Source: Stylophora pistillata
Taxonomy: Eukaryota
Assembly (NCBI RefSeq): GCF_002571385.2
Contig: NW_019217985.1
Coordinates: 383,921-447,920, forward strand
Direction of reading: 5' to 3'
Length of the DNA: 64,000 nt
Below the pieces are notes generated by a model. It made no database searches, was not told where the DNA came from, and saw only the letters and a list, made by a program, of their open reading frames with translations. Positions within the stretch are counted from its first letter, which is position 1. The number at the start of each line of letters is the position of its first letter. Positions 33,001 through 56,500 of the stretch are shown piece by piece. The position numbers and the translations under genes are program-made.

Positions 33001-36000
33001 ACAACTTGTTTTGTAAGTCTGACCATGATGCCCTATCCAATATACCACACAAACCTCCAAATATGAGTGCTTGTGAAACCACTGCCCACTGAACCATCAC
33101 ACAAACTCTGCAGCCCACAGATAGATAAATGGGTTCTAGCTGCACTTTTAAGGAAGAAGAGAGAAGAAGGAAAGAAGAATTAAGGTGCCTCCCTTACCTC
33201 CCCCCCTATCATTCCTCACCACCCCATCATAATTAAGAAAGTCTCCCGTGTATAGCATGCATAGCTTGCCTATGTTCTTCATGTAAATTCCTTTGTTTAC
33301 ACCTTCAGATCAATTTTTAAGTGGTTCAGCTGCAAGTCCTTCTACTGATTCACTAAATTCAGGTACTGCAAGTCACACTGTATGGCACCTAAGTTACCTT
33401 TAGTTTGTAATATGGACTCACTTTAACGAGTTTTTATTCAAGCATGAGTAGTGTTAAGAGCCAAGTTAAAGTGTATTTATTTAGCATTTGAGACCATATG
33501 CAGCCTTGCTTGACAGACGACCTTTAAAAAAAAACTTTTTAATGGTCTTCACCAACTCAAATAGATGTAATGCTTCATTTCCTTTTGTTGTGGCACAGGT
33601 AGGAGCGTAAAGCATGAAATAAGGTGACTTGTTCCTTTTTTCCCAATTTGTATAGCTAAGTGATCCAGTTCCTTAAATACTTATTACCAAATTATTACTA
33701 TATTAATTTATCAGATGCTGACAGCTTCCCTGGTAAACTGACAGCTCAAATGGACAAAAATAGTAAGTACAATGGCTTTAATTTCATTCTTGTATGTTTC
33801 AAGACTTAATAAAAACGAACAGCTAGACCAACAGCAACTGAGTTTGTGTTCTAGTCTGTCATATAGAAATAGTATCATAAAAAGTAAATATAAAAAGACA
33901 AAAATTGGAGAGACATCGGTTTACACACCCTGAAAATATTATAAAAGATTGATTTTGATGTGAAGGACAATGTTAGGGACAGTGAGAATCTTTTCTCAGC
34001 TGAAAAGGGCTTTACAACCTTCTGGAAATCAAGTACTTAACAAGGGTGAGAATTAATGAAAATAAATTTATCCAATGAAGGAAAAAAACTGTTCATTACC
34101 TTCAAAGAGGTTTCTCAGCAGCAGTAAGGGCTGGCAGGCATGTTCAAATCTTTATTCAGAGTGTCCGAAGATCAGCTTGTCACCTTTATTTCACTATAAT
34201 CAACACCACACAAAAGTGTCTAACTTTTAAAGCATATAGATCCCATGTGTTTCTGTTCTGAAAGGCACAGCTGAGCACATCACTCAAGTTCTTACCACAG
34301 TTTGATGTCTTCTGTGTCTATTACTGTACAGACCCAATTAAAGTAACATATAATGGTTTTGTTTTTCTTTTATTCAAAAGCAAAAGGTTGTTAATGGTGA
34401 TGTCATCTATGTCTCTGACCCCTACTGGATCATAAGAACCAATCAAAATGTGTGCATTACTCATCTTATCATAAAATATCATACTCACTGAGTTTGAAGA
34501 AAATATTATCAAGTTAACTGACTTAGTACAATTTCATGACTAAGTTGTTACGCCAGCTGTGTTGTTACCAAATTTGGATGAGTTAATGTTTGGTCTAAAA
34601 AATATCACAAAAATGTCACAGTGTCACCCTTTTTATAAAATCAGTTTTGGGTATTTCAATCACCTACACCCCTAGAAGACAAGTAAAGGGTTAATACAGC
34701 AAGGATTATGACTTAATCCTTAGTCATTCAGCATCATCTCTGCAATCTTCTACACAATGTGTGTATTGTTTATGTACTGCCTTGAGTTTCTGACTCAAAT
34801 AACCAGTTCTGTAAATCTTTGAATCCTATTTCCAGCATAGGTTTTCAACTAAAATGAAGGTGAATAATCATTCAAAATATTCTCTCTCGTTTCAATAATT
34901 ATTCTCTCTTTGGTCGAAGGATGCAAACTATTTACAATGATTATTCCTAAGTGATCTACTGTGAAGAACAAATATTGTGAACTCCTTGTTATTTGTGAAA
35001 CCAATAAGTCTCTAGAATTTTTGCTGGTTCTATTCAAATCATGTCGAAATTTATAAAGATACATTTGGCATAACTTTGCGCTCAGTCAAGGATACAAAGC
35101 ACGGAAAGGCTACAAAGTCAAAGCTCCATATTTGTGTGAAACGTACTTGAATTCAGTTTTTCGTATTTCATTATGCATTAATGGCAAAGACAATATTGAT
35201 TGCCTTTGGGACTCATAACGGCTTTGTTAATTGTATGGAATTATTAAGGAAATCGTTCCCTTTCTCAAATAGCAAGAAGGTCATAAGCTTATGTTGGCGC
35301 GCCGAGAAAACGTTTGCGTTCATATTTCAGCACTGAGATAACCTTCCTTTGCCGCCAGAGGGTCTCTTGTGTTTTCGATCTCTTTTTCGACGTGAACTCA
35401 ACCTTGTGTGGTTCGACCTTGGATATCATACCTGAGGTCATGTTTTGAATATGTTTAAGACTGTCTTATTTGACCGTCGCCTCAGGAATATCGTCTTTAC
35501 CCCAATTAACCTAGTTTTCACGTTTAAAAGAGAGAAAAATAGAAAAGAGATGATATTTGTGGATGTATTCATTGCAAACGTATACTGACAGGTGTACTTC
35601 CGACGTATTAACAGACGGCCTGTCAAGAGCTGTGCACAGAGAGCTGAGTAGCAACCGCGTCAAGGTTGCCAATTTTCCCCCACTTTTAGCACCGTAGTTA
35701 CTAAAACAAGGAATGACCTATAATGACCTACAATGATCTACAATGACCTACAGTGAGCTACAATGGGCTACAATGAGCTACAATGAGTTACCGTGGGAAC
35801 GAGGAATGACCTAAAATGACCCACAATGACCTACAATNNNNNNNNNNNNNNNNNNNNNNNNNNNNNNNNNNNNNNNNNNNNNNNNNNNNNNNNNNNNNNN
35901 NNNNNNNNNNNNNNNNNNNNNNNNNNNNNNNNNNNNNNNNNNNNNNNNNNNNNNNNNNNNNNNNNNNNNNNNNNNNNNNNNNNNNNNNNNNNNNNNNNNN

Positions 36001-39000
36001 NNNNNNNNNNNNNNNNNNNNNNNNNNNNNNNNNNNNNNNNNNNNNNNNNNNNNNNNNNNNNNNNNNNNNNNNNNNNNNNNNNNNNNNNNNNNNNNNNNNN
36101 NNNNNNNNNNNNNNNNNNNNNNNNNNNNNNNNNNNNNNNNNNNNNNNNNNNNNNNNNNNNNNNNNNNNNNNNNNNNNNNNNNNNNNNNNNNNNNNNNNNN
36201 NNNNNNNNNNNNNNNNNNNNNNNNNNNNNNNNNNNNNNNNNNNNNNNNNNNNNNNNNNNNNNNNNNNNNNNNNNNNNNNNNNNNNNNNNNNNNNNNNNNN
36301 NNNNNNNNNNNNNNNNNNNNNNNNNNNNNNNNNNNNNNNNNNNNNNNNNNNNNNNNNNNNNNNNNNNNNNNNNNNNNNNNNNNNNNNNNNNNNNNNNNNN
36401 NNNNNNNNNNNNNNNNNNNNNNNNNNNNNNNNNNNNNNNNNNNNNNNNNNNNNNNNNNNNNNNNNNNNNNNNNNNNNNNNNNNNNNNNNNNNNNNNNNNN
36501 NNNNNNNNNNNNNNNNNNNNNNNNNNNNNNNNNNNNNNNNNNNNNNNNNNNNNNNNNNNNNNNNNNNNNNNNNNNNNNNNNNNNNNNNNNNNNNNNNNNN
36601 NNNNNNNNNNNNNNNNNNNNNNNNNNNNNNNNNNNNNNNNNNNNNNNNNNNNNNNNNNNNNNNNNNNNNNNNNNNNNNNNNNNNNNNNNNNNNNNNNNNN
36701 NNNNNNNNNNNNNNNNNNNNNNNNNNNNNNNNNNNNNNNNNNNNNNNNNNNNNNNNNNNNNNNNNNNNNNNNNNNNNNNNNNNNNNNNNNNNNNNNNNNN
36801 NNNNNNNNNNNNNNNNNNNNNNNNNNNNTCAATTTAACAAATGGTAAACACCACAGCGTACACTATTGAGTTATGGATGCACGCGGGAGGTTGCTAAGCA
36901 CGAAAGAAGCGTAAGAGTCGCTCGAGGCGATAGCCGAGAGCGACTCTAGCTTCTTGAGTGCTTAGCAAACCTCCCAAGTGCATCCATAACTCAATAGTGT
37001 ACGCTGTGGTGTTTACCATTTGTTTTATAACATAACATTGATACATTGTAGCTAAAGAGTTCCCGTTTATTTAACAAATCTTACGCGACCAGAAAAAACA
37101 AGCGCGCGCGGAAAAATAGTCTTTGCATTTGCTCACGTCAGCAGCGTACACCCATGGGCAAATGGGGAACGCTAAATTGACCAATCAGAGCGCGCGCTTT
37201 ACTTTGGTTATGTTACAAATTCTGTTATCATTTGGCCTGTTATTCAGTGGACAAAAAGCAAACACGTTACGTTAATGCACACATGTCTCAGTCACGGTCC
37301 TGTTTTTTTTTTTCTTTGCCTTTTTTCTAAAATCTTCATTTCCTTCATCACAGGGATCTTACAGTAGCTCATTGTAGGTCATTGTAGGTCATTGTAGCTC
37401 ATTGTAGGTCATTGTAGCTCATTGTAGGTCATTGTAGGTCATTCCGTGTTTTAGTAACTACGCTTTTAGCGCACGGTGATGGCATTGCAAGTAACGCAGG
37501 GGAAAGAAGCGTTCACTCACTGACCATAAAATCATCATGGAAAAATTGACCTGATAAAAAAAAAATTAATGAGAGTTCAAAGACACTGTTTTGCAGTCAA
37601 TCGAATATCCGCATCAACTAAGGAAATGCTCGGCAGTTATCTTTAAAGGTGTATTCTGCGATGAGAAACTCCTAATAATCATTTGTTTTAAAATCACAGT
37701 TAAAGATTTAGGGAGTTTACACCTTTTCCCTATTTCTTGTTCCTCAAGCCCATTGAATTTCATCAGCTCCTGCAGTGTACTTAAAGCCAAATTTTTGGAA
37801 ATTTTACACCTTTGGATCAGTATTCCAGTGCAATTTCGTTTCAATATCGTATCAAACTAGAATGAAATCTGGGGGAAGTAACTACGTACAGTGCATAGTT
37901 TGTGCACAGCTAGATACAATAGATCCTTTCAGCCTCAAAGATATAATAATTGTAGAAATCATTTAGTGATTAAACTATTTTCCTCTATTTTGCTTAGTTT
38001 TGACCGATTATCTGGAAGCACAGAGGGCTCGCATCAACGATTTGAGGGTCGCGAAGTGGACAACAGAAGGCGCAGACATCGCATATCATCTGAATCTTAC
38101 AGAATCTTCAAAAAGACGGCCTGATCTGGAGGAGGGAGATGTGATTGCCTTTTTGACCAACCCCAACGCAGGAAACACGGAAATAGAGAAACTATCACAA
38201 GAGAATTCATCGCGAGCCGTTTTGGCAGGTGTCATCAGTCGATCAGCTTACATATATGCGCATGCACCTCGTTACGGCAGCGAGAAAGGTAGGTTGTGCA
38301 ATATTTCAAAATAACGGCAAATTACTGAGCATGCTCAGCTTGTTGGTCAGGAAACGAATTTGAGGTTTTCGTGTAACCCGCCCAGTTTTCAAATTATAAG
38401 CTTTACCAGTAAGATTACTATTTTTTTTATACCGCGCGATAGACTTCGCTGAAATGGAGGAACTGCTCGTAGTCTACTTATCAATAGACATCTTACTTGA
38501 TCAAGCTCATCTGAAGTGTGTCTCATCCATGATAAGACGGCTTACAAAACGTTTGTTTTCTTCTTTTTTCTTATTTCTTAATTGAACTTTGGACTGAAAA
38601 GCAGAAAACACTGCATCACTCGCAGACCCGTCCCCATAAAGCTGAAAGGCCTCATATAGCAAGTAACTAGTTCTTGTAACTTCCTGAAGCCCACCATTTC
38701 ATAGTCGGACGAACAAGAGGTTCAGGGGCTCGTTTCTCGAAAGTCCCGGTAACTTTACGGGCCCTTAACTACGGTTTTAAAATCAAAATTTAAAGGATAG
38801 GAAAGCAGGTTCTGGCACCCAAACCAGCCCTTTTTGTTTCTTTAGCTGATAGTTTTATTACATCATTTCAAAACTTTTGAAATCCCCATCTTGAATGAAA
38901 ACAGAACAGCTTTACGGGCCCGTTAAGTTACCGGGACTTTCGAGAAATGGACCCCAGGGCAGGTAATAGGGGTAAAACATTCTTTCTGAAACACCAGGCA

Positions 39001-41923
39001 GGAAACTTATAAGTTTCCAGTTCATGAGGAGTTATAAACATCTCGAGAGATTTGAGATCGTGAGACTACTCTGGATTGTTCCACCTTTTAGGTAGCACTG
39101 AGACTGTTTGTGTTATCGGCTTGGTCAAAGTTAAAGTCCTTGGGACCGTTCAGAATGGGGAGCGTATATATGTTGCACTGCATCAACCGGGTGTTGCCAT
39201 TCCAGAGACGCAGATTCCGTTACGACCTATGGCCGACCGCCGCCCGGTTTTGCTGGGTCAGGCGCTTGAGAGCAAACCGAGTAACTCTCAAGACAATGTT
39301 TAATTGGTCCAGTGCTTTGTTTCTATAGTGCTCGGTATTCAATCTGGTCAGATTAACGCTGCCATAGAAGACCTTCAGGAGAAGATGCAGCGCAAGTTTG
39401 AAGATGTCGTGGTCAAAGACAGATCAAAGTGGCTCAGAGGTGATGTTTTGTCTTTTTCAGAGTATTTCTAGAGCAAGGAACTGCATCGCCGGCTTCATTT
39501 GCTTCAAATGGTTAGTTTTATCAAGCTTAGGGTTCCGGAGCTGCCCTTTTCTACCTTCAAGTTTAAAATCGGTGCCTGCTGGGTAGAGGCACCCTGCTCC
39601 CTGATAATTCGCGGGGAGAATTTGTTCGCAGCAGACAATCTAAACTACGAACTGAGGACTGGAGGTTCTAACCTGCATCGTTGACGTCACCTTAGCCTGT
39701 TACGGACTGAGAATCACGACTGCGAGTACGCTTGTAACAGCGCCAGTTACAAGGATCCGATGAGACATTCTTTCATTCGCAGTATCGTGATAAATGTCTG
39801 ACTCACAAAACACCGGAGCACCAAGCAAATGAGGCCAAAAATTACAATGACGAGGGCAGGATGATAAGAATAGCGTTAAGTTATTAGTTATTATTTACTT
39901 ATTCATTTATTTCTTTATTTTGTGTTTCTAAACAGGCACTTTACTATTTCTTTTTCGTAACTAGGTCTGAGATGGAAAATTTTCATTCTCCTTATCATTT
40001 TCGGACTGCTTTCTGGTTTATTGTACGAGTTAATTGCCCCAGGAACTTGGTTCCAGTATCAGATGTGTAAACGTGGGTGCATTAAGGGTCACACAGCTAC
40101 CTTTAAATTTACAACACATGATTATCAAGTAAGTGTCTGAGCTAAGAATTATTTCCCTCGAATCGCAAGTCACATATAACGTGTCAAAGTCTTCTCAATT
40201 CAACTATTTCGTTGTTTCGAATATCCTAATTATCTTTTGGTTCACCAAAAGAAAGTGATGGGACAAAAAGGGAGAATCAGGACGTAGGATATTTCTACCA
40301 AAGTAAATTGACAATATGATTATGAGCTAGAGATGTTTTTCGCGTGATACTTGATTTGGGTGAAGCTTACATCAAGTATCAAGCATAGAAATCGATCACA
40401 GGAATAAGCTGAATGTTTCCTCGTAATCTACTCGTTATTAAGACCCAACCACTGTTAGGCTACTCATATAACTCACTACGTAGCCAACCAGATTCCAGCA
40501 ACTGTGATAGAACGCTGTGCACTAAGAATAATTACCAAATATCCATTTTATCTCTTACTTCAGTATATCAAAGTGAACGGGCTGGAATTAACGTGGGAGA
40601 AATTGAAGAAGAAAAAAGAGCTGGATCTTGGAGATTGCCAACCGTTTAACGCTACAGCTGGTGAGAACTAGTGTATCATTTGTTCTTTAATCCCCTTAAT
40701 TCTAGTACAGTCGAACCTCGATTAACGGCCGGACCTCGATTATCCGGACTTTTTTCTCTGGTCCCAATTTTTTTCATGAATATTAATTAGTTGTGATCTT
40801 GAAAACTCAGAGTTGCAGAAAGCCCAATAATCCTTTCAAAAGACAGTTGAAACAGCGTATTATCCTGTGCGCTTTTCAAAATTCGTAAGTGCGACGAGAC
40901 AAAGAAATATTCTGTTGCGTTATTTGCAAATACATACGGGCTGTGCAGATATCACAATTAAAATGATGTTTTCTTTGCTGTATACCTTTTGTTTACATTT
41001 CTATCTCATTAATATTCATATTTTCGATTATCCGGACTCTCGATTATCCGGACTATTTGCCGAGGTCCCGACGAGTCCGGATAATCCAGGTTCGACTGTA
41101 CTCAGTTTTTCAGCTTATTTATCCATAATTAAGTGTATCTTTGCATGCACTTGATTGGTCCGCCTCGACTAGATCTGCAAACTGCGGATCAACGCATTCT
41201 CAAATTTTGTCATGATATTAATAAAGTTAGTCAAGATATTGCCCTTCTCTAGGTGCAAATAATCAGCTCCAACACTTATCAGAGGAAAGGTTAAATTTAC
41301 TATATGAATCTCCTCCCGTTTCTTGTCCTTAGGATTACACCGACCCATTTCCCTTGAATCTTTGTTAATTAAGCTTTATGTTTATCGTTTGAAACACAGT
41401 GGAGTGGGACCGGTCATTAATTATCGACGGGGATGAGGGGAAGGGGGGTCGGAGATCCCCCATAAGGCTTTGTAATATTTTTACGACCCCCTCCTCATTG
41501 GCGCTTTCTATAGTCCCCCCTTTATACTCTTTTGGCGAAGACTGATCTCCCTTCCTTCCCCCTGAAAACCACTTGACCTTCCCCAAAGTCCCACCCCCCT
41601 TAGCCGCAAAGGCAGTCGGTATATGCGCCTTTCTGTGATGCAATGTTTATTAATTTTGACTGGAGTTTTGATTTCAGACAAACAAGGTTTCTTCTTCACT
41701 TGTCATTTCTTATTTTCCTTTCCCCTAAGGCTATCGTTATTACCTTAACTTGGATCGCTGTGCATATGGCGAGCGGATCGTGTTGGACCACAAGCCACAG
41801 ATACGCGGACCAACGGTTTTTGCCATCAACTCCACTTGCTCTGGTGTTTATTACGTGAACAAAGACAAATGGCAAGGGTACACTTCGGCAGAACACATCG
41901 AGCGTGAGCCACCTTGCACCTAA
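30037..41923 (+). CDS. Gene C: putative membrane-tethered transcription factor, ~604 aa if the internal TAA at 39301 is ignored (putative DNA-binding domain, NLS, Peptidase_G2-like chaperone, coiled coil, TM, luminal domain). Exons 30037-30091, 30741-31004, 31529-31777, 32245-32295, 33309-33362, 33715-33762, 37998-38288, 39092-39439, 39965-40128, 40564-40660, 41730-41923
   Basis: Eleven phase-consistent GT-AG exons total 1815 nt and are colinear with gene D (DIAYH, LEEGD, AGVISRSAY, VCVIGxVxVKVLG, LLGQxLE, TM+PGT, YYLNLDRCAYG). One in-frame stop means this may be a null allele or pseudogene in this assembly. Confidence 0.8.
32528..32820 (-). mobile_element. Full-length tRNA-derived SINE, same family as 15008-15315, in gene C intron 4
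   Basis: Reverse complement aligns end-to-end with the 15008 copy. Confidence 0.9.
35838..36828. other. Assembly gap (run of N)
   Basis: About 990 N; the poly-X ORFs here are artefacts. Confidence 1.
36829..37220 (+). mobile_element. Hairpin-plus-tail non-autonomous element nested in the TIR element
   Basis: ~90-bp inverted arms around CTCGAGGCGATAGCCGAG, then a tail containing TTGACCAATCAGAG. Confidence 0.7.
38726..38954. mobile_element. Harbinger-type MITE in gene C intron 7
   Basis: TIRs GGGCTCGTTTCTCGAAAGTCCCGGTAACTT / AAGTTACCGGGACTTTCGAGAAATGGACCC; CAG TSD. Confidence 0.8.
40708..41098. mobile_element. Tc1/mariner (pogo/Tigger-like) MITE in gene C intron 10
   Basis: TA|CAGTCGAACCTCGATTA ... 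TAATCCAGGTTCGACTG|TA. Confidence 0.85.
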
Positions 41924-47475: not shown

Positions 47476-48596
47476 CAGGAAATCTTAACTCTAATTGTAA
47501 TTTTTGCAGCCCTTTTCCAGCTAGACGGCCCTATCTACGAACCCAATCAGCTGTACTCAAAGTACGAATTGAATGCCTACAAACAACGGATAATACTAAG
47601 AGCGCAATTTTCAATCGAGTGTCGAAAGTTAACCGTTGTCACACTGTTTTTGTTTAACTTCGCCCTGTGAATGATCAAGAAAAACTCGCGCCACCCTTTC
47701 AGCCAATCACATGAACTTGCTACGAAGGCCATTCGCTACCAGGTCACTCGCGTTTTCCTACGCCAATTTGCATGTTTTCACTTAAAGTTCTCATTGGTTC
47801 TTCGTAATATTTTCCTTCTTTCTGATTGGCTTTTGTTATTAATTTAGTTTTGGTTTTTGAGACGTTCAATCAAAAAATGTACGGAGCAATGCGATGAAGG
47901 GGCTTCCTCTCCCTCAGGCTGTCCTTAAAATTTTTTTTTTTTTTTCTGGTTTTGTAAATCATTCTCGTTGAGAGAAGTTCGTTTTTAAGATGCAAAGATG
48001 TTTTTAAAGAGGTTTCTATGACGTAGGTTATTATAACGCATGGCACCGAGGATAAAAAATCTTCACAGGTAATGAACAAATGGAAAATTATGGAGAAAAT
48101 TCTAGTTCAATTTTTCTTAATCTAATATTAATTTGATAATGATGGCAATCATTATAATGAGAAAAATACTAACCACAGTAACAGTAAAACAATTCTAACT
48201 AAATTAACATCAAAACGACTATCAAAGACCATCGAACGGTCAAACAAATTCAATACATAACTGATTGACCAAGCCTCTTGGTCAAATAGTCAAAGTCTGT
48301 ACATTTTGAATAAACCTTTTCAACTAGTTTACATGGACCAGCCATGTGGTGCGTACTCCGCAATCCTCTCATCTTCGGCAAATGCCATCCAGCACTTAAA
48401 TTATTGAACTGTCTATGTTGAGCTGTTCTTTCATCTGCTTAAATATATTCGTTTTTCTAACAAAGCCTCGTTTTCCAGACCTTCACGTCTACAGCGGAAT
48501 TCAGCGACCATCAAAGTGAATTTAACTTCCATTGACGCTAAAATTCCCATCAAAAAGGAAATTCTCCACGGGATAATGCACACCTGGAGATTCCTG

Positions 48597-50466
48597 CTAG
48601 TCGTTTTCCTTCAGCTCTGGTTTCGTAGGATGTGTATTACACACGATATCCCTGCCGGATTCGTATGGGGTCCATACCTCCGAATGAAAATATACAGTGG
48701 TGCAGTTGTGATCAACTGCTACTACTTCTGCACCCCGCACCATTTCTTTGTTGTCTAAATGCGACCGAACATGTCGGATTCCGCCATAAGCACATCTGTC
48801 CAGATTCAGATAATAATGTGCGTCTGTAAGAGAAAGAAAACGAGCTCATTAACAGGGGTAAGGCATGATTATTGAGTTTATGTACGTCTTGAAATCACTT
48901 AACCCCAAAAGTTTTCGATTGGTCATTTAAAATGCGTGTCAGGCTGCTCCAATCTTAACCAAGCTGGTTCCGTTGTGAGATTTATCACAGTAATTCTCTA
49001 TATAATTTACTTCCCTTTTCTTGGTTTACCTAAAATTTAGGGAACCTGTTATTATTTATCGCCTGGGCGGACAATAATTTTGGTTGTATCACAGAAGGGA
49101 ATAAAGCTCTGGATTATTCTAATTAATTCCCCCCTAAATGGCAGTCAATTTTCTATCGTACCCCTTTAATACCCTGTTAGCGACGATTAATTCCCACCTC
49201 CGCTACCCCTGAAAACCATTCCTCCATTAGTCAATTTGTAAAAATATGTGTTATGTAGAAGTCTATAGCCTCTATGACTCTAACTTTACCTGTGTAGTTT
49301 ATTCTGCCAAAGTTCAAACCCATTTTTTCCTTCAACTTGTCGAAAGTAAACTCAATACAGTGTACGCGAGGAATCTGTGTACGGAAAAAGAGGACACTAT
49401 CAATGAAGGGGTAAAAACAACACGCTACTCACTATGTTGTGCATCTTATGTGGCAGAAAAAAAAGCAATTTCAAAGGAACCCTTTTTTTTTCTTCCAACA
49501 AAACCTATTCCCGGTAGTTTGGGTAACAGGAGAAAACAAATACTGTTTAGTTCAAAACAAAGAAAATAGCGACAACTGTCGATAATCCATTGAACAAATC
49601 CTCAGTGTTATTTCTTAGCCATGGAAAGTATTTTTTTTGCGGATCAATTCCAAACCATACCCAGTACAGCTAACTCTCTATTTTTAAGTAGAGAAGGTGT
49701 GGTAATACCTGGAAGTCTGTGGTGGTAAATGTGAACCACAGCTCACTGCCTTCGATGGAGCCCTGACGACACCTGTAATAACGAAGCGCGGTGCCTGGGA
49801 CGAACAACTGGTATAACAAAACTCCTAATAACACAGCTAGAATGAAGCCTGCGAACAACCAGCGGCGAAGCCCTATAGAAACGTGCAAACATGTATTAAC
49901 GAATGAGATAAATTCACCCACTATGAAAAGAGGCGATTAATACAGTGAATTTCATTTTTGATTCTTAGCTATTATAAGAGTAAAAGAGTAGCGATAGTAA
50001 TTGTCAATTGATCTTGTGATATCAGACCTAGACTTTCACTCAACAAAACGAGCACTGTGATTGGCTGATTCTTGTTCACGTGTTTCCTGATCAAATTCAA
50101 ATGCATCCTGAATACAACAGTATGTTTTTGCCATCTGAATGTTTAAGGGAAAGTCAAAATATATAACAAAGCACCTAATGTATGGTCCCTCGGGAAACTA
50201 GTCAGTTTTATTTTCCCTCGAGTCTTGATGTTTCCCGAGATGAAGTCGAGGGAAACATCAGAACTCTCAGGAAAACAAAACTAACGGTTTCCCTCGGGAC
50301 CATACATTAAGTGTATAATGTTCACCTTTAATTAATTTCTATATTCGCCTTACCTTACCTACGTCAGAGCAAAGGGCTAACGCTAGAAACGTCAGCTTTT
50401 TAACTCTTTACGGTGGCCAATTTACAATTTCAACTTAGTTGATGTAACCAAATTACCTTGCTACCG

Positions 50467-50500
<34 letters not shown>

Positions 50501-53500
50501 TTCATCCTTTATTCATTTACCTAACGAACAGGCGTACACTTTTTAAGTTTTTCAGGCGAGCAGACGCTCAACGCGAACGCGAAGGTCGAGTCACGTGAAT
50601 GATAAGGAACGCGGGGGTCGAGTTACGCGCGAGAGAAGGAGCGCGAGGGGTGAGTTACGTTCGTGAAAGGATCGTGAAGATTCAGCAACGTGCGTTTGAG
50701 GAAGCACGAAAATCGTACCACGCATAAGAGGAGGAACTTGATGGTCGAGTCAGGAGAGGAGGTACAAGTACGATTCGGCCTTTGCACTCGCCCCAAAAAA
50801 AGCATACTAGAAGACCTCGTGTATAATGAAAAACGTCAAATGATCCAAAAAATTCAAAGATAGGCGACATAATTACCTGAAAAACATTTCTTCTTCATCT
50901 TATTCACTTCAGTTTTGACATCTTCTCTGACGTGCTTCCGCAAGTCGTCGCTCGCAGCCTCGGCCATGTGACTGGATGTAATACTTAGGAGAATCGAAAC
51001 GAACGACTGTACCAAATTAACATCGTTTTCTTCAGCGTCCCGTCTTTCTAGTGTTTGGCCGAGTAGAAAGGCATCACTGGCCATGCGACCGTTCAAACGG
51101 CTCTGAGGTATAGCAACTCCTGAGTGTTCCAATGAGGCAAAAATTCGCTCGCCGTTTTTCACTGGACCCAGTACTTTGACGTTCACCATGCCAATCACAC
51201 ACACGAGATCGTCTAAACCTGACACAGAACAGCCAGAAAACTCACTTAAACTTGTTAAAAAAATATTCATAAGTTTGGACAAATTACAGTAAGATCTCCA
51301 TTCGGGGAGAAGACCTCGAGATTTGAATAAAAAGAACCCAGCATTCGTTCTTATGAGTCTTTCAGTACAACTTTGGACAAATCACAGTAAGATCTCTATT
51401 CAGGGAACAACAAACTCAGGAGTAGAAAAAGAGTCCCTCCGATAGGGCGCTGCTGTCCCTTTGATAAAAGAGACACACTGATTACAAGCGCATTTTTTCA
51501 GTTGTGACCAAAGTTTGCATACTTTATATTGAGGTGCTCCTATGTAAGAGAAAAGGGGAAAAAGACCTCCAAATACGAAAGGAAACCTTGGTTATAGGGT
51601 TGACGAGTAACAATAAACTGATAACCTTCTCTCACTGTTACCTTTTTCTTCGCCATCTGCTGGTGTCCTGGCCTCTAAATACGCGGATCTACTGATCACT
51701 CCCGCCATCTTAGCTTTAGACGCATTAAATTGGGTCAACTTCTCTATGTGGGTGTTGCCACTGGAACTTTCAAAGAACCCAATGATATCACCCTCTTCGA
51801 GAGGAAGGTCGAGTTCGGTTTTGTTCAGTTTGAAATGATAAGCAATGTCTCCTTTCTGTGTAAGAATAGGCTTCTTAACTCGCAGTTCATTAATTAGGGC
51901 AGATTGAGCGTCGAGGCGGTTTGTAATTATCTCTGCGGCATTGATACCTGGAAATAAGAGAGCAATTCATAAACCAAATAATACGTTGTTAACAGACAAA
52001 AAACTGGGCTCTTCAAATCGTCTGGGTCATCTCCCGAGGCATGAGGGATCAGTGCCAGGCCGATAACACGAACCAAGTCCTTGCTCTGCTGCAAAACTCG
52101 AATCAAACTGTTTCACTCATCTGCAAAACGGCTTGTTTTCTATAAGTAACACGTTTTAACTGGAAGTAGTAGAACTTTTGTCTGTGAGTATGACACGACC
52201 GAAACAGGAAAAAGAAGAGGATCGAGCGATCTGTACATGTTGCACAGGTGACACTTTACTGGTGACTTGTGATTAAGTCAAGAAAGATGCCAGGCGTGTC
52301 TTAGTTGATGCTCCGTCAGGTCCACTAAGTAACAGGAAAAGTCCTAGTTAAGGCAGTGACTTACAATCGCTGTTCATGCCACTGCTCCAACTTCCACTGG
52401 GACTGGTATCCAATGCCAACACTACAAGAAGAGAGAAAGAAATGAGCTGACAACAAACAAAATACGACTGCTTTTGTCAGCGGTTACACGCCAGACAAGA
52501 GAGATTTTCCCCAACAATCAACGTGAAAACAGAAAGATTTAGAACCACGTATACTGCAGATGCGGACGGCAAACACTAAACTCTGATTCTGCTTACTTTT
52601 CTTCCAATACTCAACTAAATTAACAGTAAAGTAGAAGAATTACAAAGCAAACAGAAAAGTTCAACTCTCCTGAGTTGACGCTCGCGTAATCATGGTTCAA
52701 AATTTCTTTCTTGTTATCGCTCATGAACAGAGATGTCAGTTAAAATTTACAGCGACAACTGTAATACATCGACGTGTCGAATGAAATACGTGAAGCATCC
52801 TCTGGTCCACAGTTAAAACTATTGGGTGAAATATAATTTGAGTGACTTTTCTTCCCACAAGGAGCAAGCATCTTCAAATTGCTCAATCGCAGTGTCTGAA
52901 ATGGGAGAAAATTTACCTACCTGAGATTAGCCTTTTCCGGGCGAAATAGAAAGAAGAGGTTATAATTTTGAGTGGGGTCGCGTACAAACGAAACCTCTCT
53001 CCTTTGCACAACCCGACCCAAGCCTCTCTCGGCCGCGATCGCTCCGTTTACAACAGTTTTTTCGTTCCATTTTACTAACTGAACGCCCAGAACAGGCTAC
53101 CCCGTGATTAAAACGTCCACAACTTACTTTTTCGCTTTTTTCTGTTATTTTCCGGACTTGGTGTTCCACAATATCCATTATCCACGCTTACCAAATCCTC
53201 TTCTGTGAAATGCAGCAGACAAAAAAGACTCAGATCATTGCTGTATGTATCACCACAAGAGTGTGGTACAAGAGCAAGGGAAACATTCTTCGGGTTCAAT
53301 GCGGCGATTCTGAATTTTCTAGTTATCATATTTAGCGTTTACAATCTTCATCTTCATTCACCAAATGAAACTAGGAAATTTGAAGAGGCCGAGAAGGGTC
53401 TGGACAACCTTGCTCAACAAAATTTGGTTCCCGATTATCTGAGAAATTTTCATGGATGTACTGAGGGCTCTTCGCAGTTTGCAATCTTAATCTACAGGGA

Positions 53501-56500
53501 CGCGGCGCCCCTCTCCCAATACAATAACCTGGCCAGGTTATCGTATAGTGCCCTTGTGCAAAACACTTTACTCTCTCCAGTGCCTCTCTCCAGGAGTATA
53601 ACTGGGCAACGACGAATTGTCAAGGAAGCCTGATGGAATGCTGAGAGGTAACCTCACGATGAACTAGCATCCCATCCAGGGGGGAGGGGGGGTAGTATTT
53701 CTCTTAGCTGCTTCATGCTGTGGAAACTAGAATAAGCTCTGGCTGAGTGACCAAGCCACTTGGCTCACGTAGAGACTTTGCTTCTTACCCACAAGGTCAT
53801 CGTGAGTACGAGTGCTGTGAACATTGTGCTATATGAATTATTCCCCGTCCAGTTTACCTGATTCCTGTTTCGCGTTTTTTCTGCTTTGCACTTGGAAGCT
53901 TTTACTGATGAATTCCTTCGTCGTTCCATCCGCAAAATGAAGCACAACAATCACGCGGAAGATGTTTCTTTCCTCTCCTTTAACGCGTGAAAGTTCATAT
54001 ACTTTAATGCCATTGTTACTATAAACTGAATCGAGGTTGACGGCAAAATTCGCCACAAACAAATCCTTTTTACTGTACACCAAGTTCAAAGAAACTCGCC
54101 CATTCATGTCCTGAAGAATTCTGGCAGCCTCTGGACATCTTTCCACGTATGCACGCACATCCTGGGAAAAACGTAACAAGACGACATTAGGAGACAGAAG
54201 CGACGTACATTACGAATACAGTCGACTCCCGAGAACTCATATCCTCTCTAACTCAAACCAAAATCGATTTCTCTTACACCTTCCCCCTCAGGGGGCGGGT
54301 GAGGGGAGGGTGCACCTCCTAGTAAGAGGCTAGTAGGAATGTGCCGCTGAATAGGGTCGCATATTGCACGACTGGGTCAACTATGTTGGAGTTTCGTCTA
54401 GATTGGGGTCGTACATTTTCGGGATTTTTTTAGGTAAGAAAATTCTGGTAAAGCTTTAACTAAGGTAGATGCTTAAACAGAAAGTGACTAAATTGGAATC
54501 GCGAAAATTACATTTACCCCAAAGTGACTGAGATAGGGTCTATAGTTGGCCACAATAGACTAGTGGTTCTGAGAGGCCAGCAGCACATACACAGCAAAAA
54601 TTGACCAAAGTAGCCCCCTTCCACCTAGGACCATTCCGTTCATGCGAAAATCACATTACGATTCATAATAAAATATGACAGCTGTGCATAATGTTAAATA
54701 AATTAGTAATGTTCTTAATCTTTTTCGCAAAGGGTCCTTGAATAGAGACCATATTTTAAAATGAAGTTTTAACTTAAACTTAACTTAACTTAACTTAACT
54801 TAACTAAACATAATCAACCACTACCCACAAATAGCATAGCTAGTCGCGGCGGGCAGTGTGTGGACGCTAAAACATCTTACATAAATTTCGGTTCAACAAA
54901 AGATTCAATAAATATACAAGAAACAGAAATTAAATATTAAATCATTAATTTAAAAGCAGAAATGACAGTATGAGATAAAAATACAGAAATAGAAACACAT
55001 GACAATAAATAGAAGAATACATAAGTTATAGGCTACTATTAACTGGATTTAACTTTTGACACATCATTGATTATCCGTTCTACGTCAACATAACTATCTT
55101 GAACTTGAAGATTTTGAAATAATAATGTTGTTAGCTGTTCATTCGAGGCTGAAAAGAAGCGAAGCCCGATCTCAAGAGGAAAAAGTTAATTTATTCAATT
55201 AGTTGATTCCTTCAAGTTTGTCTTCATTTAGGATAAACGCGAATTAAAAAAATCTAATTACCTGAATTGGTTTTTGTGAAGTTGCCATGAGGTGTACCTC
55301 TGCATCCAAGAGCCTTTGTTCTGAGTTTGCATTTCGTCGCATCTGTCCTTTCTCGTAGACATCTTTCAAATCCAGAATGGTCACATTAGCCTTCGTATCT
55401 TCCGTATAGGTCACGTCGAATGAAGGAAACACTAATAAAAGTGAAAATCAAAGTCAAAGACTTATTCAAAGAGAATTGCCTCTCGCATAAAGCAAGCATT
55501 AACCTTTAAGTCACCTGAGTGACCAAGATAGAATTTCTCAATCCAATATCAATACAATATCAATCAGACAAGAGAATAAAGAAAAATATCCATCAGGCTC
55601 CGGTTGTTCAAAGGGCGGATAACGCTATCCAACGGATAAATCGCTATCCAGCGGATAAGTGTTACCAAAACGTACTGCACTAACCACTGGATAGAGATTA
55701 ATCCAGTGTATAGCGTTATCCATCCTTCCAGCGGATAAGTGTTACCAAAACATACTGCGCTATCCACCGGATAGAGATTTATCCAGTGTATAGCGTTATC
55801 CATTCTTTGAACAACCGGGCCCAGCAGATTATTAGTTGATTCAGTGCCAAATTCTCTAAACTCACACTATTAAAACTGTTCGGCACACAGTAAGGAGAGT
55901 TACAAATGAGATCTTAGTGGGGAATGCGTTAAAAGCTAATTTCCCGCTTACTAAATGGAGGTATCTCTGACAAGTCCGTTCACGCAATCGAATTAGCACT
56001 GACTTTGGGTGAACTAGCGATATGAAATAAAACGTGGTTACGTTTCTGGGAACTTTTAGGGTCAAAAACGATATTTGTGAAAGGAGCAAATTAAAACCAA
56101 TTTCACGCTTAGGTCTAAGACTTGCTTTTTGGACGCAAGGCGCGATCCTTCTTACTGTGTAACTTGAATTAAAACTCACAGATGAAAAACTAAATATAAC
56201 TTGATCTATGCTTTAATATGTAAGGATACTTTAGAGCTAGATTATTCCTTTATTTTACCTAACCAGCTATCTAGGTGGGGGCCACACGTTTCAATTTTCC
56301 AGGTGGGACGAAGGGGAGATCAGTCGTCGCTAAGAGCCTCATAGAATAAAGGGGGACTATAGAAAATTGAATGGCAAGGAGAGGGGAACTTAGGGAAGAT
56401 CAGGTAAATATTCTTGGGACAAAAATTAAGTCCTCCGACCTCCCCCACCCCCCCTTCCCACCCAACACCCCCTTCCCCTTCACCCATGCAATAAATAATG

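What the first reader, a model, noticed from the sequence alone, without database searches (positions are those of the whole stretch)
51830..51947. Beta-helix-like stalk directly before the chaperone, but the catalytic Glu of DxAE is replaced (DIAYH) in both paralogs
Seen: D has INAAEIITNRLDAQSALINELRVKK...GDIAYHF and C (33715-33762 plus 37998-38100) has KNILTDYLEAQRARINDLRVAK...GADIAYHL. The ~5-residue hydrophobic periodicity resembles triple beta-helix segments of phage fibres. Established: G2 chaperones need the Glu of D[YF]AE for autocleavage just before the Asp. Inference: either the module is kept only for trimerisation, or the conserved Tyr-His provides a different or regulated cleavage chemistry.
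Basis: partly seen in the sequence, partly recalled or inferred. Interest (0 to 1): 0.75.

Follow-up and report, generated by a model that had tools for sequence, protein, structure and literature searches.

The report
Phage-type self-cutting domain, catalytic residue swapped
A coral membrane protein family carries the fold of a bacteriophage tail-spike's self-cutting, trimer-forming domain, but the glutamate that the phage needs for cutting is a tyrosine in nearly every family member, so whether these proteins still cut themselves is open and testable.

Summary
Exon 51947-51642 (minus strand) of gene D encodes about 32 residues, then GDIAYHF; gene C has ADIAYHL. RNA contigs confirm that D is spliced.

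The domain that starts at this Asp is a relative of the phi29 gp12 C-terminal autochaperone (Peptidase_G2, tandem beta-tulip). That chain was the top match of 48,161 in two independent models (Z 9.9 and 11.9), and each alignment starts at the Asp, opposite gp12 Asp692. Profile comparison, protein-language features and a viral fold library agree. Pfam does not detect it.

All 120 phage and bacterial G2 proteins examined have D-x-[AG]-E. The cnidarian and choanoflagellate family has D in 122 of 122 and Tyr in 122 of 123, with no Glu and no Phe. His follows in only 98 of 123. The conserved pair is therefore Asp-Tyr, not Tyr-His.

PDB 3SUC, the uncleaved gp12, carries E695Q, which supports the Glu requirement.

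The "beta-helix-like stalk" is not supported. There is no 5-residue periodicity, and the two models disagree (weak helix versus weak strands).

Best reading: a trimerising module without the canonical Glu chemistry. A retained Asp/Tyr self-cleavage remains possible (about 35%).

The scan had already noted this family elsewhere in this genome (s1-791419).

The parts
51850..51947 (-). Gene D 'stalk': the first 32 codons of exon X1 (INAAEIITNRLDAQSALINELRVKKPILTQKG) plus the split first codon. Its secondary structure is unresolved.
   Evidence: A weak helix in the gene C model and weak strands in P0105.
51835..51849 (-). Gene D DIAYH codons (GAC ATT GCT TAT CAT). The Asp matches gp12 Asp692 (P1' of the phage cleavage site). 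The Tyr takes the place of the catalytic Glu695.
51642..51947 (-). Gene D exon X1: the stalk plus the first half of the G2/D4-like beta-tulip domain (through GVISRSAY).
   Evidence: Splice joints in RNA contigs. Profile search gave 142 relatives.
50876..51218 (-). Gene D exon X2: the second half of the G2/D4-like domain (VCVIGMVNVKVLGPVKNGE...) and the start of the long helix.
   Evidence: intron 51219-51641, 423 nt.
49709..49871 (-). Gene D exon with the transmembrane helix (FAGFILAVLLGVLLYQLF).
49290..49374 (-). Gene D exon, part of the luminal C-terminal domain.
48597..48823 (-). Gene D last coding stretch: the Cys-containing C-terminal domain (YYLNLDRCAYGG...).
   Evidence: The lower bound 48597 is read off the open frame (which runs down to 48600) and matches the gene D start in note s1-783817. 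No stop codon was read directly.
52365..52421 (-). Gene D small linker exon upstream of X1.
   Evidence: Joints 51944>52362 (cut +3) and 52421>53128.
53128..53202 (-). Gene D linker exon. An open frame over it reads ...PENNRKKRK, which looks like a nuclear localisation signal. Which frame the exon uses was not checked.
53858..54164 (-). Gene D exon encoding the C-terminal half of the N-terminal Ig-like domain.
   Evidence: Fold of the gene C homolog.
33714..33762 (+). Gene C small exon ending ...TAQMDKN with a split Ile codon. It lies just upstream of, and runs into, the start of the stalk.
   Evidence: It matches P0003.
37998..38288 (+). Gene C exon X1 (LTDYLEAQRARINDLRVAKWTTEGADIAYHL...SRSAYIYAHAPRYGSEK).
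38075..38089 (+). Gene C DIAYH codons (GAC ATC GCA TAT CAT).
39097..39411 (+). Gene C exon X2 stretch (matched part), with an in-frame TAA at 39301-39303.
   Evidence: P0003 has Lys at that codon.

Best explanation
The stretch encodes the last ~30 residues before, and the first strand of, a domain descended from the C-terminal autochaperone 'D4' of phage tail spikes such as phi29 gp12 (Pfam Peptidase_G2, a tandem beta-tulip that trimerises).

In corals and other cnidarians this domain sits in the cytosolic part of a type II membrane protein. The order is: a low-complexity N-terminus, an Ig-like domain, a basic linker, a short 'stalk', the G2-like domain, a long helix, a transmembrane helix, and a Cys-containing luminal domain.

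The Asp that opens the domain is the counterpart of the phage P1' Asp692. The phage's catalytic Glu695 is a Tyr throughout the family, and the second acidic residue of the phage motif (Glu698) is mostly Lys, Pro or Arg.

Shown here: the homology, the residue correspondence, the family-wide Asp-Tyr constraint, and expression with splicing.

Inferred: the domain trimerises the cytosolic portion next to the membrane, as D4 does for tail spikes. The canonical Glu-dependent G2 cleavage is not available. The Asp-Tyr pair is kept for a specific hydrogen-bonded role at the former active site, not for the phage chemistry. If the N-terminal part is released at all, another protease would do it. I put this non-self-cleaving reading at about 50%. 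The homology and the Glu-to-Tyr swap themselves I put at about 90%.
For: Fold. The top hit of 48,161 PDB chains is the gp12 C-terminal fragment 3gqh_A. For the gene C model P0003: Z 9.9, rmsd 3.5, 117 aligned, 20% identity, model 267-415 against chain 692-854. For the independent member P0105: Z 11.9, rmsd 3.1, 117 aligned, 22% identity, model 66-205 against 692-854. The remaining high hits are beta-tulip cement, decoration and triplex proteins. The viral fold library BFVD gave 38 hits at E<=1e-3, including 'Preneck appendage protein' at 1.8e-9 and 4.9e-9.

Sequence. hhalign of the family domain against a G2 domain profile gave P 1.7e-4. In its extended alignment gDIAYhf lies opposite aDyAEYFE. 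ESM features: 17 of 30 nearest clusters carry PF11962, score 0.93 for the best such cluster.

Motif. G2 proteins have D-x-[AG]-E in 120 of 120. The family has D in 122 of 122 and Y in 122 of 123, with 0 Glu and 0 Phe. D and Y are the only invariant non-Gly, non-Leu residues after Met1 in 24 full-length proteins.

Glu requirement. 3SUC, the uncleaved precursor, has Q at 695. 3GQH starts at D692 and 3GQ7 ends at S691.

D4 trimerises and acts as an autochaperone (passages read in bioRxiv 10.1101/216911 and PMC13317679).

The architecture comes from the models and expression from RNA contigs.
Against: Pfam does not detect Peptidase_G2 in any of the 24 full-length members even at E<=10. The only recurring weak family is Phage_cement (3 of 24, best E 8.9e-4, below its cut-off). 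PDB sequence searches with family profiles found nothing.

Against 'no self-cleavage': the Asp is kept as strictly as in cleaving phage proteins. Tyr is never replaced by Phe, which argues that its hydroxyl matters. The layout (NLS-like linker N-terminal of the site, membrane anchor C-terminal of it) parallels MYRF, where the phage domain does cleave (PMC8326128).

No trimer model and no atomic coordinates were available, so the neighbours of Asp and Tyr (for example the conserved E+18, R+53 and S+54) are unknown. The role of Glu695 rests on the 3SUC sequence plus my recollection of Xiang et al. 2009, which is not held.
Confidence: 0.5

Rival explanations
1. The domain still cuts its own chain at the G/A|Asp bond after trimerisation, using a variant of the G2 site. 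The invariant Asp would act as the intramolecular base or nucleophile, and the invariant Tyr hydroxyl (perhaps with conserved E+18, R+53 or S+54 from the same or a neighbouring subunit) would replace Glu. This would release the N-terminal Ig-like domain with its basic linker from the membrane, as the S74 domain does for MYRF. The cleavage might be slower or conditional.
For: Asp is present in 122 of 122 and Tyr in 122 of 123, with no Phe. That is catalytic-grade conservation, and these are the only invariant polar residues in the whole protein. The conservation spans Anthozoa, Hydrozoa, Scyphozoa and a choanoflagellate. NLS-like K/R runs lie upstream of the site, in an open frame over D exon 53202-53128 and in P0003, P0014 and P0002. 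The layout is the same as in MYRF, whose phage-derived domain self-cleaves only as a trimer (PMC8326128, passages).
Against: All 120 G2 proteins keep Glu. The near-isosteric E695Q is what the uncleaved gp12 crystal carries, so a hydrogen-bond donor alone seems insufficient. I know of no precedent for Asp/Tyr cleavage N-terminal to Asp (from recall). His at +4 is not conserved (98 of 123). Type II membrane proteins can be released by site-1/site-2-type proteases without self-cleavage (established knowledge).
Confidence: 0.35
2. The domain is not specifically G2-derived. It would be a generic beta-tulip cement or decoration-type domain, or a convergent fold. The D-x-A match to the G2 motif would then be coincidence, and 'Glu replaced' would be a meaningless comparison.
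For: The only Pfam signal is Phage_cement, weak and in 3 of 24 members. Cement proteins score Z 8-10, close behind gp12. HMMER finds no G2 similarity.
Against: gp12 D4 is the top hit in both models and has the highest identity (20-22% against 9-17%). Both alignments start exactly at Asp opposite Asp692. hhalign P is 1.7e-4, and it places DIAY on DYAE; stalk plus motif alone gives P 0.0033. ESM neighbours carry PF11962. BFVD top hits include preneck appendage proteins. Shared GVIS and V-G-x-V-x-V...G[DE] segments are visible by eye.
Confidence: 0.08
3. One reading: the ~30 residues before the Asp form a triple beta-helix stalk like that of endosialidase or MYRF.
For: In the P0105 subfamily the segment is T/Q/G-rich with alternating hydrophobics and is predicted as short strands. 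Residues from -12 to +7 alternate in beta fashion. Cement-protein N-terminal arms align to it (ranges from residue 40).
Against: It is only about 27 residues long and has no 5- or 6-residue repeat. It is predicted helical in the gene C model, with pLDDT block means of 38-62. pLDDT is also only 55-64 in the other model. It shows no similarity to the G2 pre-cleavage segment (P 0.27). The -26/-22/-15/-12 spacing fits a short coiled coil equally well.
Confidence: 0.2

Closest known systems
phi29 gp12 C-terminal autochaperone D4 (Pfam PF11962 Peptidase_G2; MEROPS family G2 as I recall it)
   Same: Same tandem beta-tulip fold (Z 9.9 and 11.9). The domain starts at an invariant Asp. The D-[hydrophobic]-[AG] start, the GVIS strand and the V-G-x-V-x-V...G-[DE] strand are shared. 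D4 is a trimerising module.
   Different: The catalytic Glu is Tyr, and the second Glu of the motif is mostly Lys, Pro or Arg. The ~55-residue insert of gp12 is missing. The domain is internal and followed by a helix, a TM segment and a luminal domain, not at the C-terminus of a beta-helical tail spike. The host is an animal. It falls below Pfam detection.
MYRF: NDT80-type DNA-binding domain, beta-helical stalk, Peptidase_S74 ICA domain, TM segment
   Same: The overall logic is the same: a cytosolic N-terminal domain and basic linker, a phage tail-spike autochaperone domain, a helix, a single TM segment and a luminal C-terminal domain. Both use a phage trimerisation module next to the membrane.
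   Different: It uses a different phage domain (G2/D4 beta-tulip, not S74) and has no Ser-Lys dyad. No NDT80 signature was found by Pfam, and the N-terminal domain matches only generic Ig-like folds. The stalk is not shown to be a beta-helix, and cleavage is unproven.
Phage cement/decoration beta-tulip proteins (PF22758; Pam3 gp6, E217 gp24, HFTV1, XM1)
   Same: Same fold class (Z 8-10). There are weak Pfam hits in 3 of 24 members. These proteins are non-cleaving trimer formers.
   Different: They have no Asp-x-A-Tyr/Glu start motif aligned, lower identity, a capsid context and no membrane anchor.

Membership tests
Peptidase_G2 / gp12 D4 autochaperone | Match to Pfam PF11962 above its gathering score | tested here: not met
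   No PF11962 hit for the 4 exon translations of D and C at E<=1. None for 18 full-length relatives at E<=0.01. None appears among the 25 families shown for the 24 members at E<=10; 37 families matched and 12 were not shown. gp12 itself scores E 9e-88.
Peptidase_G2 / gp12 D4 autochaperone | D4 tandem beta-tulip fold | tested here: met
   3gqh_A is the top hit of 48,161 chains in two models: Z 9.9 and 11.9, 117 residues aligned, 20-22% identity. BFVD preneck appendage proteins match at E 1.8e-9.
Peptidase_G2 / gp12 D4 autochaperone | Invariant Asp as the first residue of the domain (P1' of the cleavage site) | tested here: met
   D in 122 of 122. It aligns to Asp692, which is the first residue of PDB 3GQH.
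Peptidase_G2 / gp12 D4 autochaperone | Catalytic Glu three residues after the Asp (D-x-[AG]-E) | tested here: not met
   Tyr in 122 of 123, His in 1, Glu in 0. G2 proteins have Glu in 120 of 120.
Peptidase_G2 / gp12 D4 autochaperone | Located at the extreme C-terminus of a beta-helical tail spike or fibre | tested here: not met
   The domain is internal. It is followed by a long helix that includes the TM segment and by a ~100-residue domain, and preceded by an Ig-like domain and a disordered linker. No PF12708 hit.
Peptidase_G2 / gp12 D4 autochaperone | Self-cleavage after trimerisation; ATP-dependent release | not testable with these tools
   This needs protein expression. The ATP-site residues of gp12 were not available to me (Xiang 2009 is not held).
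MYRF-type membrane-bound factor (Peptidase_S74 ICA) | S74 ICA domain with a Ser-Lys dyad | tested here: not met
   No S74 hit in Pfam scans. The fold is a beta-tulip, not ICA.
MYRF-type membrane-bound factor (Peptidase_S74 ICA) | NDT80/PhoG-type DNA-binding domain | tested here: not met
   No Pfam hit. The N-terminal domain (P0003 42-181) matches only generic Ig-like domains such as ICAM-1 D3-D5 (Z 8.9); no transcription factor is among the 50 rows shown. A distant relationship is not excluded.
MYRF-type membrane-bound factor (Peptidase_S74 ICA) | Layout: N-terminal domain, phage chaperone domain, single TM segment, luminal C-terminal domain | tested here: met
   Domain order in the two models. 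Gene D exons match the family over the whole length, exon by exon. Membrane topology is inferred from the lack of a signal peptide and from flanking charges.
Triple beta-helix stalk | Short repeats with regularly spaced core hydrophobics that form an intertwined trimeric beta-helix | tested here: inconclusive
   No regular period. Monomer models disagree and have low confidence. No trimer modelling tool was available.
Phage cement protein (PF22758) | Pfam match above its cut-off and a capsid context | tested here: not met
   Best score 19.8 bits against a cut-off of 27, in 3 of 24 members. The family is an animal membrane protein.

The most novel reading that the evidence does not exclude
Cnidarians (and at least one choanoflagellate) domesticated a second, different phage tail-spike autochaperone (G2/D4 instead of MYRF's S74). 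They rewired its active site from Asp/Glu to Asp/Tyr and still use it for trimerisation-dependent self-cleavage, which frees a membrane-tethered N-terminal factor. That would be a new self-processing chemistry and an independent, convergent invention of MYRF-type signalling.
Probability: 0.35. Interest if true: 0.85.

Novelty: new variant of a known kind. Interest (0 to 1): 0.62.

Why it matters
MYRF is the one textbook case of an animal protein that borrowed a phage tail-spike chaperone to cut itself off a membrane. Here a different phage chaperone domain sits in the same place in a pan-cnidarian gene family whose members are all labelled 'uncharacterized protein'.

The swap of the one residue the phage needs for cutting, held as Tyr across hundreds of millions of years together with the Asp, gives a sharp and cheap experiment. 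If the protein cleaves, that is a new autoproteolytic chemistry and a convergent signalling design. If it does not, it shows how a self-cleaving module is converted into a permanent trimerisation device.

My searches of the held library found no paper on a G2-type domain in eukaryotic cellular proteins. 'Peptidase_G2' gave 0 papers. 'peptidase G2 / PF11962 / G2 autoproteolytic' gave 14 papers; by their titles and abstract starts these concern phage or Bacillus proteins or other unrelated subjects such as carboxypeptidase G2.

Tried and rejected
Steps that found nothing or did not help:
- Pfam on single exons of D and C and on the upstream open frames found nothing.
- PDB sequence searches with the exon profiles A1 and A2 and the full-length profile A3 gave only chance hits at E > 0.8.
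- hhalign of A3 against the single gp12 sequence was weak (E 0.076). It became useful only against a G2 profile.
- Foldseek of the 604-residue model against PDB gave no hit at E<=1e-3, only Ig-like and phage decoration proteins at E 3e-3 to 2e-2. VIA-align was needed.
- A scan of viral contigs with A1 found no relative.
- PHROGs gave nothing significant (best E 0.0037, a family of unknown function).
- I rejected my own impression that the stalk resembles the G2 pre-cleavage segment (LDSLNGRIK against LEAQRARIN): hhalign P 0.27.
- The 52112-51930 and 53338-53111 open frames are not exons of D as I first guessed. RNA shows 52421-52365 and 53202-53128 instead.
- My first X2 boundary (51219) was corrected to 51218.

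Literature:
- Xiang et al. 2009 is not held.
- Searches for the gp12 catalytic residues found nothing relevant.
- The role of Glu695 therefore rests and recall.
- Supplementary figures S1 and S2 of PMC13317679, which concern D4 cleavage, were not seen.

- No trimer could be modelled.
Gene D was searched exon by exon. Full-length analyses used database proteins returned by the tools (P0003, the gene C product, and others).
Full report
WHAT IS THERE. The window is animal DNA with introns. Earlier scan notes call it a stony coral. The 90%-identity cluster of gene C's product contains a Stylophora pistillata RefSeq protein named 'uncharacterized protein'.

On the minus strand, 51945-51643 translates to INAAEIITNRLDAQSALINELRVKKPILTQKGDIAYHFKLNKTELDLPLEEGDIIGFF...AGVISRSAYLEARTPADGEEK. 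The DIAYH codons are at 51849-51835. The next exon reads GLDDLVCVIGMVNVKVLGPVKNGERIF.... Gene C, on the plus strand, has ...DKN|ILTDYLEAQRARINDLRVAKWTTEGADIAYHL..., split between 33714-33762 and 37998-38288.

EXPRESSION AND EXON STRUCTURE.
- Of 24 runs listed, 20 hold the stretch and 5 of those are on record as RNA.
- I laid four RNA runs from three studies on 48400-54300.
- Contigs of three polyA runs (X3 and X4 of one study, X7 of another) show GT..AG joints. These define gene D exons 54164-53858, 53202-53128, 52421-52365, 51947-51642 (X1), 51218-50876 (X2), 49871-49709, 49374-49290 and 48823 downwards.
- One 2,540-nt contig carries pieces of at least five of these exons (the printed rows place pieces of it on five), and all eight joints are seen in its run (X7).
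- The fourth run (X2, metatranscriptomic) showed only unspliced pieces.
- No difference from the window is listed inside the DIAYH codons; 7 rows of that table were not shown.
Separate translations of its coding stretches match family members over the whole protein length.

A GENE FAMILY.
- The genome holds six copies of exon X1, five on the window's contig and one on another. Their motifs are GDIAYHF, ADIAYHL, GDIAYHL, HDIAYYI and ADIGYHF twice.
- A profile of the six exons, searched against 1.84 billion representative proteins, found 142 proteins at E<=1e-3 and 113 at E<=1e-10.
- Named members come from Nematostella (several loci), Acropora, Hydra, Hydractinia, the jellyfish Rhopilema and the choanoflagellate Salpingoeca infusionum. 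Every NCBI or UniProt name shown is 'uncharacterized' or 'predicted protein', and two members carry only database gene labels.
- P0003 (604 aa) is the gene C product, assembled from 2.3-2.9 kb contigs and therefore from transcripts.

WHAT THE DOMAIN IS. Pfam sees nothing convincing: no Peptidase_G2, no S74 and no NDT80. The only recurring signal is a weak Phage_cement match in 3 of 24 full-length members.

Structure settles the question.
- An AlphaFold model of P0003 built on 24 sequences has these parts:
  - an Ig-like domain (44-180);
  - a disordered linker;
  - a low-confidence helix (234-251);
  - a beta domain (268-415);
  - a 56-residue helix that includes the TM segment;
  - a C-terminal domain.
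- Against 48,161 PDB chains the best match is the released C-terminal fragment of phi29 gp12, 3gqh_A. The figures are Z 9.9, rmsd 3.5 and 117 residues aligned at 20% identity, with model 267-415 on chain 692-854.
- A second model, of the unrelated member P0105 built on 136 sequences, gives the same top hit at Z 11.9, rmsd 3.1 and 22% identity, with model 66-205 on 692-854.
- Below gp12 come only beta-tulip proteins: phage cement and decoration proteins, herpesvirus triplex proteins, lambda gpD and MoeA. That is the class a preprint assigns to gp12 D4 (10.1101/216911, passages read).
- Foldseek against predicted viral structures gives 38 hits at E<=1e-3. The top is E 7.9e-11, and two 'Preneck appendage protein' entries score about 1e-9.
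- Independent of structure, hhalign of the family domain against a profile of 24 G2 domains gives P 1.7e-4.
- 17 of the 30 nearest ESM-Atlas clusters carry PF11962.

THE MOTIF.
- gp12 reads ...GGNTWS|DFAEYFESLDG....
- PDB sequences show that the mature protein 3GQ7 ends at Ser691 and the fragment 3GQH begins at Asp692. The only uncleaved precursor, 3SUC, has DFAQYFE, which is E695Q.
The mechanism itself I know only from recall of Xiang et al. 2009, which is not held.
- In 120 of 120 phage and bacterial G2 proteins the motif is D-[YFLVI]-[AG]-E-[YLMH].
- Both fold alignments start at the family's Asp opposite Asp692. hhalign puts gDIAYhf on aDyAEYFE. Tyr therefore takes the place of Glu695.
- Of the 142 relatives, 140 realigned and 122 cover the full motif. 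Asp is present in 122 of 122. Position +3 is Tyr in 122 of 123 and His in one, with no Glu and no Phe. Position +4 is His in 98, Tyr 12, Arg 4, Thr 4, Ser 3 and Phe 2.
- Among 24 full-length proteins the invariant residues are Met1, Asp267, Tyr270, three glycines and one leucine.
- Other well-kept polar positions in the domain are Glu+18, Asn+41, Arg+53 and Ser+54.
- After the Asp, positions +1, +3, +5 and +7 (I, Y, F, L) alternate as in a strand, so Tyr shares a face with the hydrophobic residues and His lies on the other face.
- The conserved pair is therefore Asp-Tyr, not Tyr-His.

THE 'STALK'.
- Conserved large hydrophobic columns lie at -27, -26, -22, -15, -12, -10 and -6, with Ala at -20 and -17 and Thr at -4. 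This is not a 5-residue period.
- The first part fits two heptads and the last part alternates.
- The P0003 model makes it a helix, with 10-residue pLDDT block means of 38-62. The P0105 model makes two three-residue strands, pLDDT 55-64.
- It shows no profile similarity to the segment before the G2 cleavage site (P 0.27). With the motif included, P is 0.0033.
- A beta-helix is therefore not shown. A short trimeric neck of either kind remains possible. The segment is about 27 residues long, much less than a tail-spike stalk.

HOW IT MOST LIKELY WORKS.
- Shown: a gp12-D4-type domain, expressed and under strong constraint, lies between an Ig-like domain with a basic linker and a helix with a membrane anchor.
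- Established for D4: it trimerises on its own and chaperones trimer assembly (PMC13317679 and 10.1101/216911, passages).
- Inferred: in this family it trimerises the cytosolic part at the membrane.
- Because the Glu is absent in every member, the phage chemistry cannot operate.
- I consider it slightly more likely (about 50%) that the module no longer cuts itself and that Asp-Tyr form a fixed hydrogen-bonded feature of the former site.
- The rival (about 35%) is a rewired Asp/Tyr self-cleavage. Its support is the catalytic-grade conservation of both residues, the absence of Phe, and the MYRF-like layout. MYRF cleaves through a Ser-Lys dyad only as a trimer (PMC8326128, passages).
- A generic cement-like or convergent domain is unlikely (about 8%).

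COMPARISON AND NOVELTY. It works like, and descends from, the G2/D4 autochaperone, but it fails two defining features of the family as a peptidase: the Glu and the C-terminal tail-spike context. It resembles MYRF in layout only. I found no paper on such a domain in eukaryotic cellular proteins. The scan had already noted the family on other DNA of this genome (s1-791419) and on this window (s1-783817). What this report adds is the residue-level result, the family-wide tally, the 3SUC evidence and the verdict on the stalk.

Noticed in passing
window 39301-39303: Gene C has an in-frame TAA here, but the transcript-derived protein P0003 (604 aa, with two further 604-aa members in its 90%-identity cluster) has Lys at that codon. 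This could be an allele, an assembly error or a copy broken in this individual. The RefSeq model of the gene is only 407 aa.
   Followed up: partly
window 48597-48823 and 49290-49374 (gene D); P0105 residues 283-395: The luminal C-terminal domain, with conserved Cys551, Cys577, Cys603 and Trp588 in P0003 numbering, has no structural match (best Z 3.2 among 48,161 chains). Its fold is unassigned.
   Followed up: partly
window 50370-50566: This lies in the intron between D exon X2 and the TM exon. All four RNA runs pile up extreme depth here (about 665 to 43,000 against tens elsewhere), with many loose ends. It is probably a repeat or an abundant small transcript shared with other loci.
   Followed up: no
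G000 contig C202 around 283-311 kb (L003, L005, L006), window genes C and D, and contig C179 (L004): The family has six copies in this genome, five of them on one contig. One further copy (L011) shows a TGA inside exon X2.
   Followed up: partly
DNA binding is not supported by anything I ran.
   Followed up: partly
PDB 8h2i chain cU; BFVD A0A481YT87: gp12 D4 matches a 1,343-residue capsid-entry chain named 'P22' at E 8.8e-6. I recall 8H2I as the chlorovirus PBCV-1 capsid, which is unverified. The coral-family model matches a Marseillevirus protein at E 2.8e-5. G2/beta-tulip domains in giant viruses of eukaryotes could be the route into animals.
   Followed up: no
window 51897: All four RNA runs read T where the window has G. 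On the minus strand this is CTA to ATA, Leu to Ile, at residue 17 of the stalk. It is a conservative polymorphism outside the motif.
   Followed up: no
window 35831-36832: An N-masked stretch lies inside gene C's long intron (33763-37997). It was left as it is.
   Followed up: no
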